Assembly (NCBI RefSeq): GCF_002113885.1
Contig: NW_018408915.1
Coordinates: forward strand, 1,093,396 to 1,157,395
Origin: Mizuhopecten yessoensis
Taxonomy: Eukaryota
Direction of reading: 5' to 3'
DNA length: 64,000 nt
Part shown: positions 11,273 through 11,692 of the stretch, one piece after another
How positions within the stretch are numbered: position 1 is the stretch's first letter
Layout: each line of letters opens with the position of its first letter
The notes under the pieces: generated by a model
The model's input: only the letters and a program-made list of their open reading frames with translations
Told to the model about the DNA's origin: nothing
Database searches by the model: none
Program-made: the position numbers and the translations under genes

Positions 11273-11692
11273 ATGATTATCACTTCAGTGTAAAATTATT
11301 AAAGATAGTAGGTGGTTATCATCTTTATGTACAGTTATGGTTGTATAAACCAGTGGTTGTCACTTCAGTGCAAATTTATTTAGTGTGATAGGTGGTTATC
11401 ACATTTATGTACCGTCATGGGTGTATAACCCAGTAGTTATCACTTCAGTGTAAATTTATTTAGTGTAATAGGTGGTTATCACCTTTATGTACCGTCATGG
11501 TTGTATAACCCAGTAGTTATCACTTCAGTGTAAATTTATTTAGCGTAATAGGTGGTTATCACCTTTATGTACCGTCATGGTGGTATAAACCAGTGGTTAT
11601 CACTTCAGTGTAAATTTATTTAGTGTAATAGGTGGTTATCACCGTTGTGTTACACTGGCATTTTTTAGTTTTGCGTATTCGGTGGTTATCGG
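11273..11692 (+). repeat. Internal tandem array: 80-bp unit x ~4.6, built from 11 GTGGTTATCAC-like cores with alternating 28/30-nt spacers
   Basis: CACTTCAGTG at 11281, 11361, 11441, 11521, 11601; cores start at 11273, 11312, 11353, 11392, 11433, 11472, 11513, 11552, 11593, 11632, 11682. Confidence 0.95.

What the first reader, a model, noticed from the sequence alone, without database searches (positions are those of the whole stretch)
11273..11692. Repeat-spacer-like palindromic array between RT and tyrosine recombinase of a DIRS/PAT-like retroelement
Seen: 11 copies of a core GTGGTTATCAC at a regular ~40-nt pitch, separated by two alternating spacer types (A, 28 nt, TTCAGTGTAAATTTATTTAGTGTAATAG; B, 30 nt, CTTTATGTACCGTCATGGTTGTATAACCCA). 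The end units are more diverged and the last spacer is a unique 39-mer. Each core is the centre of a palindrome whose stem changes with context (AGGTG-GTTAT-CACCT vs AGTG-GTTAT-CACT), which suggests selection for dyad or hairpin structure. Spacer B starts with TTTATGTAC, which also occurs at the element's right end (13012-13020). Inference: the array may be functional, e.g. a structured non-coding RNA module (packaging or RT template/priming, or processed small RNAs) or iterated binding sites for the element's recombinase or MTase-like domain. I know of no standard description of such an array in YR retrotransposons.
Basis: partly seen in the sequence, partly recalled or inferred. Interest (0 to 1): 0.8.

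Follow-up and report, generated by a model that had tools for sequence, protein, structure and literature searches.

The report
Hairpin-motif repeat array inside scallop retrotransposon
The array is a real 80-base tandem repeat in the non-coding gap between the polymerase and recombinase genes of a scallop PAT-like retrotransposon, and related bivalve elements carry their own repeated short palindromic motifs at the same place, which suggests an undescribed control or replication signal whose function is still unknown.

Summary
Window 11273-11692 holds 11 core copies at an alternating 39/41-nt pitch, that is an 80-nt unit repeated 4.7 times.

- **Host element:** a 4.84-kb PAT-like tyrosine-recombinase (YR) retrotransposon of Mizuhopecten yessoensis (8203-13045). 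Its order is gag, pol (RT and Dam-like MT), array, YR.
- **Other copies:** every genomic copy that spans the site carries the array, with about 6 to 14 cores. The unit occurs nowhere else in the genome.
- **Relatives:** about half of roughly 20 related families sampled have their own repeated dyad motif in the same pol-YR gap. They come from five bivalve species besides the scallop, plus unnamed ENA assemblies.
  - A GTTAT centre recurs with different complementary arms in three families.
  - GCACCATGTGC is perfectly conserved in three oyster species while the spacers are randomised.
- **Splicing:** the gap lies in a predicted, conserved intron (donor just after the gag stop, acceptor just before YR). 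The array would then be present only in full-length RNA or cDNA.
- **Limits:** function is unresolved. Families with a short gap lack any array, the hairpins are thermodynamically marginal, and within this family the cores are no better conserved than the spacers.
- **Reading:** most likely an amplified, accessory cis-acting stem-loop or dyad cluster. A neutral minisatellite remains a serious rival.

One published mention of such internal repeats exists, in cockle CedCL34.

The parts
8203..13045 (+). PAT-like YR retrotransposon copy that hosts the array. This copy is defective: it lacks the downstream A2-X-B2 module and its YR 5' part is frame-broken.
   Evidence: Extent of homology to about 10 other genomic copies at 96-99% identity. 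No inverted terminal repeats.
8203..8331 (+). Left terminal repeat (A1, called 'L' here).
   Evidence: In other copies it is repeated directly after the right end.
8359..9183 (+). gag ORF with a CCHC zinc knuckle.
   Evidence: Pfam zf-CCHC. Homologous to the gag of related elements.
9194..9202 (+). Predicted 5' splice donor ATG|GTAAGC, 13 nt after the gag stop.
   Evidence: A donor-like site lies 4-16 nt after the gag stop in all families. The NCBI model P0001 starts M|NTVLL, which is consistent with this ATG being spliced to 11889. Inferred; no RNA data.
8744..11170 (+). pol ORF (RT, RNase H region, Dam-like methyltransferase domain).
   Evidence: Pfam RVT_1 at 60 bits; PF05869 Dam at 26.4 bits, E 6.5e-6.
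11250..11264 (+). Single dyad GTAAC-GTTAG-GTTAC just upstream of the array.
11273..11692 (+). The array: 11 core copies (GTGGTTATCAC and variants), an 80-nt unit made of two 40-nt halves. The first and last units are diverged.
   Evidence: Present with about 6 to 14 cores in the other copies.
11856..11888 (+). Polypyrimidine tract and predicted 3' splice acceptor (ACAG at 11885-11888). Exon 2 would start at 11889.
   Evidence: The NCBI model P0001 begins with the residues encoded right after this AG. A comparable acceptor stands before YR in the other families.
11932..12899 (+). YR coding region. The ATG at 11932 is out of frame here because of an extra G within 11919-11923 and a 7-bp deletion after 11971. 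The open frame runs 11973-12899.
   Evidence: Alignment with four other copies; ORFs of the copies; Pfam Phage_integrase; coordinates.
12921..13045 (+). Right terminal repeat (B1, called 'R' here). It ends in the conserved junction motif, with ATTTATGT at 13011-13018 and ACATAA at 13040-13045.

Best explanation
The array is a tandemly amplified form of a cluster of short dyad (stem-loop) motifs. Many bivalve PAT-like YR retrotransposons carry such a cluster in the non-coding spacer between pol and YR.

That spacer lies at the 3' end of a predicted intron running from just after the gag stop to just before YR. The motifs would therefore be present in the full-length genomic RNA and its minus-strand cDNA, and absent from the spliced YR mRNA.

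I propose that each core (arms AGGTG/CACCT or AGTG/CACT around GTTAT) is one copy of an accessory cis-acting recognition site, read in single-stranded nucleic acid by an element-encoded or host protein. It could help to mark, package, export or second-strand-prime the full-length molecule.

The 80-nt higher-order repeat and its varying copy number would come from unequal crossing-over or reverse-transcriptase slippage.

**Shown:** the anatomy, presence in all copies, copy-number variation, the recurrence of iterated dyads at this position in other families, and selection on one such motif.

**Inferred:** the splicing, the single-stranded reading, and any role.
For: - **Array and its context:**
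- **Distribution in the genome:** every copy that spans the site has the array, with about 6 to 14 cores and the same diagnostic edge units. The unit is found only inside these elements, with 27 hits against 0 for the control pattern.
- **Iterated motifs in the same gap of other families, against shuffles:**
  - C1510, 10 copies (0/100 shuffles reach this)
  - P. maximus, 6 (0/100)
  - O. edulis, 4 (0/100)
  - S. cucullata, 4 (0/100)
  - P. imbricata, 4 (2/100)
  - M. edulis, 5 (3/100)
- **Further array:** the C262 family has a 43-nt unit repeated 10.3 times.
- **Placement:** the motifs occur only in the gap and only on the sense strand of 10-14 kb loci.
- **Dyad character:** five of the six independent iterated motifs scored are dyads with arms of at least 4 bp, where 7.75% of random 14-mers are.
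- **GTTAT centre with different arms:** AGGTG/CACCT, AGTG/CACT, ACCC/GGGT and AATCGT/ACGATT. Background is 3 such dyads in 173 kb over both strands. About 0.12 further families would be expected by chance and 2 were seen.
- **Selection:** three aligned GCACCATGTGCA copies are 12/12 identical in three oyster species. Their spacers are about 50% identical and YR third codon positions 47-61%.
- **Splice sites:** conserved donor and acceptor, and NCBI gene models that splice across pol and the gap.
- **Activity:** an active cockle DIRS-type element has internal repeats between its Int and RT ORFs (PMC11126487).
Against: - About half of the sampled families, several with intact ORFs, have a 30-200 nt gap and no array. 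The cluster is therefore dispensable for the basic life cycle.
- Within this family the cores vary as much as the spacers, 0.034 against 0.046 differences per site.
- Isolated hairpins are weak (-3 to -8 kcal/mol) and no better than shuffles.
- In the sense RNA ensemble the arms pair with probability of only 0.1-0.3. They pair better in antisense RNA or in ssDNA.
- Some motifs have a 2- or 3-nt centre (GCCA-CT-TGGC, GCAC-CAT-GTGC), which suits duplex DNA sites better than hairpins.
- There is no Rfam match.
- No expression or binding data were available.
Confidence: 0.45

Rival explanations
1. Neutral internal minisatellite. The pol-YR spacer is the only stretch of the element free of coding constraint. 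Small hairpins there stall reverse transcriptase or polymerase and provoke slippage. Units that contain a dyad then get duplicated and homogenised without serving any function.
For: - Copy number varies from about 6 to 14 cores among near-identical copies, with the middle units homogenised and the edge units diverged.
- Core and spacer variability do not differ within the family.
- Many related families do without any array.
- Long gaps in some loci tolerate poly-A-bearing insertions.
- Internal tandem repeats are common in retrotransposons in general (discussion and references in PMC8268682).
Against: - Slippage does not explain the perfect conservation of a 12-mer, three times over, across three oyster species with randomised spacers.
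- It does not explain the recurrence of the same GTTAT centre with different complementary arms in families sharing 38-49% YR identity.
- It does not explain dispersed, no longer tandem motif copies that keep the core only.
Confidence: 0.3
2. An array of duplex-DNA binding sites. These could be an internal enhancer or promoter made of reiterated sites for a dimeric host transcription factor. Alternatively they could be accessory (arm-type) sites that organise the recombinase on the circular DNA intermediate.
For: - Short palindromes with 4-5 bp arms and 2-6 bp centres are typical of dimeric DNA-binding proteins. Motifs such as GCCA-CT-TGGC and GCAC-CAT-GTGC make poor hairpins.
- The motifs are reiterated 3 to 14 times, as in viral enhancers. 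This comparison rests on my own knowledge of LTR enhancer repeats and of the Su(Hw) site array of gypsy.
Against: - The centre is conserved while the arms change. That is the reverse of what half-site recognition predicts.
- The motifs differ between families, which is unexpected for a conserved host factor.
- No copy of the motif lies at the termini or at the B1|A2 junction where recombination should occur.
- Spacings of 33, 40 and 43 nt, and irregular ones, show no common helical phasing.
- A conserved splice donor and acceptor already provide a route to YR expression without an internal promoter.
Confidence: 0.2
3. Splicing regulator of the decoy 5' splice-site kind (like the negative regulator of splicing of Rous sarcoma virus), which would keep most transcripts unspliced.
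For: - The array sits inside the predicted intron, about 200 nt upstream of the acceptor.
- The C1510 family unit carries a near-consensus GAG|GTGAGA in most copies.
Against: - The window array has no site scoring 6 bits or more with a 5' splice-site matrix, where 1.7 are expected by chance.
- Most other families show no enrichment either.
Confidence: 0.05

Closest known systems
Internal tandem repeats of the cockle DIRS-type element CedCL34 (PMC11126487)
   Same: A bivalve YR retrotransposon whose integrase and RT ORFs are separated by internal direct or tandem repeats (61-bp unit). The element is active, so such arrays are compatible with mobility.
   Different: Only mentioned in a sentence and a figure legend. 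That element is about 7.5 kb with four ORFs.
Hypervariable tandem-repeat regions inside LTR retrotransposons (arrays in untranslated regions that can seed satellite DNA)
   Same: A short array in a non-coding part of a retroelement, with copy number varying between copies and homogenised central units.
   Different: Here the array has not spread as a free satellite. Related families keep a conserved short core at the same position, which points to constraint on the core.
Multiple dispersed packaging stem-loops of RNA viruses and the psi region of retroviruses (own knowledge)
   Same: Several small stem-loops that present a shared loop motif on variable stems. In retroviruses they sit in sequence that is removed from spliced RNAs, so only the full-length RNA carries them.
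   Different: No binding or packaging data exist here. The stems are short and weak, sense-strand folding is predicted to be poor, and many relatives lack the cluster altogether.
Reiterated protein-binding sites in mobile elements, such as the Su(Hw) site array of gypsy, enhancer repeats of retroviral LTRs and arm-type sites of phage lambda attP (own knowledge)
   Same: A short core repeated many times at a regular pitch, with AT-rich spacers, in a non-coding part of a mobile element.
   Different: The conserved part here is the centre of a dyad whose arms change between families. No cognate protein is known, and the motif is absent from the recombination junction.

Membership tests
PAT-like YR retrotransposons (DIRS order) | Encodes a tyrosine recombinase | tested here: met
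   Phage_integrase E 3.9e-5, 23.9 bits, just under the Pfam cut-off. There are 796 homologues at E<=1e-20, many named Tyr recombinase or xerD homologue in bivalves.
PAT-like YR retrotransposons (DIRS order) | pol with RT/RNase H plus a methyltransferase-like domain, in the order gag - pol - YR | tested here: met
   RVT_1 at 60 bits. Dam PF05869 at 26.4 bits (cut-off 28.1), E 6.5e-6. ORF order 8359-9183, 8744-11170, 11973-12899.
PAT-like YR retrotransposons (DIRS order) | Split direct repeats A1 ... B1-A2-B2, and no inverted terminal repeats or internal complementary region | tested here: inconclusive
   There are no inverted repeats between the ends. The window copy has only A1 and B1. Other copies of the family have B1 directly followed by A2, a conserved stretch of about 300 bp, then B2, repeated 1-3 times. 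The sister family C1510 and all foreign loci show A1/A2 repeats. This is a variant with an insert between A2 and B2.
Minisatellite inside a transposable element | Head-to-tail units in non-coding sequence, copy number varying between element copies, edge units more diverged | tested here: met
   (stop codons in all three forward frames).
Cis-acting RNA stem-loop signal (packaging or export type) | Pairing kept by compensatory change across relatives | tested here: inconclusive
   The same GTTAT centre has four different complementary arm pairs in three families, and paired one-base arm shortening occurs in two arrays. The families cannot be aligned, so this is not column-by-column covariation.
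Cis-acting RNA stem-loop signal (packaging or export type) | Stable local structure on the transcribed strand | tested here: not met
   Isolated hairpins fold at -3 to -8 kcal/mol with z-scores from -0.04 to -1.7. Arm-pairing probability in sense RNA is 0.1-0.3.
Cis-acting RNA stem-loop signal (packaging or export type) | Binding by Gag or another protein, and an effect on packaging or export | not testable with these tools
   This needs experiments.
Tyrosine-recombinase crossover or core site | The same site is present where recombination occurs (termini or circle junction), with inverted binding elements around a 6-8 bp overlap | tested here: not met
   The core motif is absent from the termini, the junction and the flanks in every locus. 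The arms are only 4-5 bp.
Repeat-spacer array of the CRISPR kind (wording of the finding's title) | Identical repeats separated by unique spacers | tested here: not met
   Only two spacer types alternate, so this is an 80-nt higher-order tandem repeat. The genome is a scallop's.
Known RNA families (Rfam 15) | A match to a curated covariance model | tested here: not met
   No match at E<=1 in 8100-13200 on either strand.

The most novel reading that the evidence does not exclude
The iterated stem-loops, with a GUUAU-type loop on lineage-specific stems, would be the first cis-acting replication signal defined for PAT-like YR retrotransposons. They would act as a multi-copy recognition site carried only by the unspliced genomic RNA or its minus-strand cDNA, and would recruit Gag, RT or a host factor for packaging or for second-strand initiation. 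Copy number would tune efficiency.
Probability: 0.25. Interest if true: 0.7.

Novelty: new variant of a known kind. Interest (0 to 1): 0.55.

Why it matters
Apart from the terminal repeats and the DIRS-1 internal complementary region, very little is known about the cis-acting sequences of YR retrotransposons. The primer of reverse transcription, the packaging signal and the route to recombinase expression are all undefined (PMC7192593).

A family-specific iterated dyad at a fixed position gives a concrete, mutable target for experiments, because it:
- lies inside a conserved predicted intron;
- is under selection in at least one lineage.

Such elements are active in transmissible cancers of cockles, where one with internal repeats has expanded (PMC11126487), so an experimental system may exist.

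If the array proves neutral, it remains a clean example of how a retroelement spacer breeds minisatellites.

Tried and rejected
- **Decoy 5' splice sites.** A splice-site matrix finds none in the window array. Only the C1510 unit fits.
- **Array unit as a copy of the circle junction.**
  - Own unit against own junction is not significant in any family (p 0.19-0.96).
  - Only the C1510 unit resembles the window family's junction (AGGTGAGACATAAATGAA against AGGAGAACATAAATGAA; none of 300 shuffles reached its score).
  - With 56 comparisons made, this is kept as an unexplained lead only.
- **TTTATGTAC link to the right end.** The word is there, and it forms the 5' arm of a conserved junction hairpin. 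The match to the array is not beyond chance.
- **Free satellite elsewhere in the genome.** None found; all 27 pattern hits lie in element copies.
- **Coding potential.** There are stops in all three forward frames, and no ORF of 80 aa or more on either strand.
- **Known RNA family.** None.
- **Host transcription-factor and tRNA-anticodon look-alikes of the core** (GATA, Myb, E-box, tRNA loops). Considered from memory only. None fits all the GTTAT families, so they were dropped.
- **Core-versus-spacer conservation within the family.** No difference.
- **Whole-array folding.** The z-scores (-4.0 sense, -3.4 antisense) are inflated by the repeats and were not used as evidence.
- **Look-ups that found nothing.** P0001 and P0104 returned no record.
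- **Spliced product.** I did not build or search the joined YR product. The exons were only examined separately by reference.

Full report
**1. What is there**

The window comes from Mizuhopecten yessoensis. The recombinase of a sister copy is identical to NCBI LOC110467217.

TRF reports one array at 11277-11650 with period 80, 4.7 copies and 90% matches. Read at 40-nt resolution, it has 11 copies of GTGGTTATCAC within 2 mismatches in 11273-11692. Their starts alternate 39 and 41 nt apart, and the last copy follows a unique longer spacer.

The two spacer types alternate strictly. The structure is therefore a higher-order tandem repeat of two diverged 40-mers, not a repeat-spacer array with unique spacers.

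The arms beside the GTTAT centre are AGGTG/CACCT in one half-unit and AGTG/CACT in the other, so both arms are one base shorter together. The best 10-mer occurs 10 times in the gap, against at most 4 in shuffles.

**2. The host element**

Homology to other genomic copies delimits a 4.84-kb element at 8203-13045. It contains:
- gag with a CCHC knuckle, 8359-9183;
- pol with RVT_1 and a Dam-like domain, 8744-11170;
- a 760-nt non-coding gap that holds the array;
- the recombinase, 11973-12899.

The ends are not inverted repeats.

In other copies the right end (R) is followed at once by a copy of the left end (L). A conserved stretch of about 300 bp and another R come next, and this module is repeated one to three times. 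The sister family C1510 and all foreign relatives also have A1/A2 direct repeats.

This is the split-direct-repeat layout of PAT-like elements as described in PMC3266345, PMC6681497 and PMC7192593, with an insert between A2 and B2.

The window copy is defective. It lacks the A2-X-B2 module. It also has an extra G and a 7-bp deletion in the 5' part of the recombinase frame.

**3. The array in other copies**

About ten copies exist at 96-99% identity, several interrupted by assembly gaps. Every copy that spans the site has the array.

| Copy | Cores |
|---|---|
| C4383 and C5585 (identical, possibly haplotigs) | 14 |
| Window | 10-11 |
| C5587 | 8 |
| C5566 and C981 | about 6 |

The first two units and the last carry the same diagnostic substitutions in all copies, and the central units are homogenised. 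This is the usual behaviour of a minisatellite that predates the spread of the family.

Across 19 full units, cores differ from the consensus at 0.034 per site and spacers at 0.046. That is no real difference. A 23-nt piece of the unit occurs 27 times in the 988-Mb assembly, always inside these copies, against 0 for the control.

**4. Relatives**

I sampled the pol-YR gap of about 20 related families. They come from the same genome and from Pecten maximus, Ostrea edulis, Saccostrea cucullata, Pinctada imbricata, Mytilus edulis, M. galloprovincialis and unnamed ENA assemblies.

About half have an enlarged gap with an iterated, family-specific short motif:

| Family | Motif and arrangement |
|---|---|
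| C1510 | 33-nt unit x 9, CTCGG-GTTGGT-CCGAG |
| C262 | 43-nt unit x 10.3, AATCGT-GTTAT-ACGATT |
| M. edulis | six TCCC-GTGAA-GGGA and three ACCC-GTTAT-GGGT |
| P. maximus | six GGCCACTTGGC |
| The three oysters | four GCACCATGTGC each |

- **Significance:** counts exceed shuffles in eight gaps.
- **Placement:** in each locus the motif is confined to the gap and to the sense strand.
- **Dyad character:** five of the six independent iterated motifs scored are dyads with arms of 4 bp or more. Only 7.75% of random 14-mers from these loci are.
- **GTTAT centre:** GTTAT-centred dyads occur 3 times in 173 kb of background over both strands. Given the window motif, about 0.12 further families would be expected to show one and two do, each with different arms.
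- **Selection in the oyster clade:** YR identity there is 69-80% and third codon positions are 47-61% identical. Three aligned copies of the 12-mer are identical in all three species, while the spacers sit near 50%. That is purifying selection on the motif.

The other half of the families have gaps of 30-200 nt and no array, and several of them have intact ORFs. The cluster is therefore an accessory and not a core requirement.

**5. Position relative to splicing**

A donor-like site lies 4-16 nt after the gag stop in every family. In the window it is ATG|GTAAGC at 9194-9202. A polypyrimidine tract plus AG stands just before the recombinase frame, with ACAG at 11885-11888 in the window.

The NCBI model for P. 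maximus splices exactly across pol and the gap. The M. yessoensis model begins with M followed by the residues encoded right after the acceptor.

The array would thus be intronic for the recombinase mRNA and present only in full-length RNA and its cDNA. It remains a prediction, because I had no RNA data. I did not build or search the joined product.

**6. Which molecule?**

- **RNA hairpins:** isolated hairpins fold at -3 to -8 kcal/mol and are no better than shuffles.
- **Full-gap ensemble:** the arms pair with probability 0.1-0.3 in sense RNA, 0.4-0.9 in antisense RNA for five of the eight gaps tested (0.01-0.13 in the three oyster gaps), and 0.66-0.80 in single-stranded DNA of either strand for three of the families.
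- **For a single-stranded reading:** a conserved centre with changing complementary arms argues for this. DIRS-1 is known to make single-stranded cDNA intermediates (PMC7192593).
- **For a duplex reading:** motifs with 2- or 3-nt centres would suit duplex sites better.

I cannot decide between these.

**7. Ideas tested and dropped**

Decoy splice donors, a copy of the circle junction, a free satellite, coding potential and a known RNA family were all checked and dropped.

**8. Prior knowledge**

The DIRS/PAT overviews I searched do not mention such arrays.

One paper on cockle neoplasia notes that the DIRS-type element CedCL34 has internal 61-bp repeats separating its integrase and RT ORFs. 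That element is expanding in the tumour lineages (PMC11126487). Internal arrays in LTR retrotransposons are well known (PMC8268682 discussion).

**9. Verdict**

The array itself is an ordinary-looking internal minisatellite. Its core belongs to a recurrent, position-specific class of iterated dyad motifs in bivalve PAT-like elements that has not been described and is under selection in at least one lineage.

My best reading is an accessory cis-acting site on the full-length nucleic acid (confidence 0.45). The rivals are a neutral minisatellite (0.30), duplex binding sites (0.20) and splice control (0.05).

Noticed in passing
window 9181-9202 and 11856-11889; L054:1642-1667; L058:5353-5372 and 7900-7912: All related families have a donor-like site 4-16 nt after the gag stop (ATG|GTAAG in the two scallop families, GTT(A/G)AGTA in most others) and an acceptor just before YR. 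NCBI gene models splice across pol. This suggests a spliced gag-YR mRNA in which YR starts at, or just after, the junction.
   Followed up: partly
window 13011-13045; L043:6380-6430; L054:5690-5730: The B1|A2 junction carries a conserved hairpin whose 3' arm spans the junction. It reads ATTTATGT ... ACATAA|AT in the window family and ATTTATATT ... AATATAAAT in C1510, so the changes are compensatory. The surrounding 35 nt are conserved in all sampled families. It may be the recombination or priming site.
   Followed up: partly
L043:6416-8084 (C4383), also L048, L049, L046: Downstream of most copies lies a 556-bp module: the left end, a conserved stretch of about 300 bp, then the right end. It is repeated in tandem one to three times. 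The 300-bp part matches nothing inside the element. It may be a short non-autonomous partner or part of the terminal repeat system.
   Followed up: partly
L054:4119-4417 against L043:6400-6430: The 33-nt array unit of the C1510 family contains AGGTGAGACATAAATGAA, which is close to the window family's circle junction AGGAGAACATAAATGAA. None of 300 shuffles reached its score, but 56 comparisons were made. It is unexplained.
   Followed up: partly
window 6013-8011: Two overlapping ORFs in different frames (535 and 211 aa) together encode a three-domain multicopper oxidase without visible introns. The retrotransposon is inserted about 190 bp downstream. This could be a frameshifted retrogene or an unrecognised short intron.
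   Followed up: no
L059:1004-3141 (Ostrea edulis): A 55-bp unit repeated 39 times abuts the left end of the oyster element, and part of it matches sequence just downstream of that element's A2 repeat. It looks like an expanded piece of an upstream terminal module.
   Followed up: no
window 8744-9183: pol starts at an ATG 440 nt inside gag, in another reading frame. This is a long gag-pol overlap, with the predicted splice donor just beyond it.
   Followed up: no
window 29163-29461, 29781-31412, 34710-35510, 52728-53309, 55605-55811: Several other tandem arrays are present in the window, with periods of 25, 135, 162/318, 154/315, 206 and 36/72/108 nt. None was examined.
   Followed up: no
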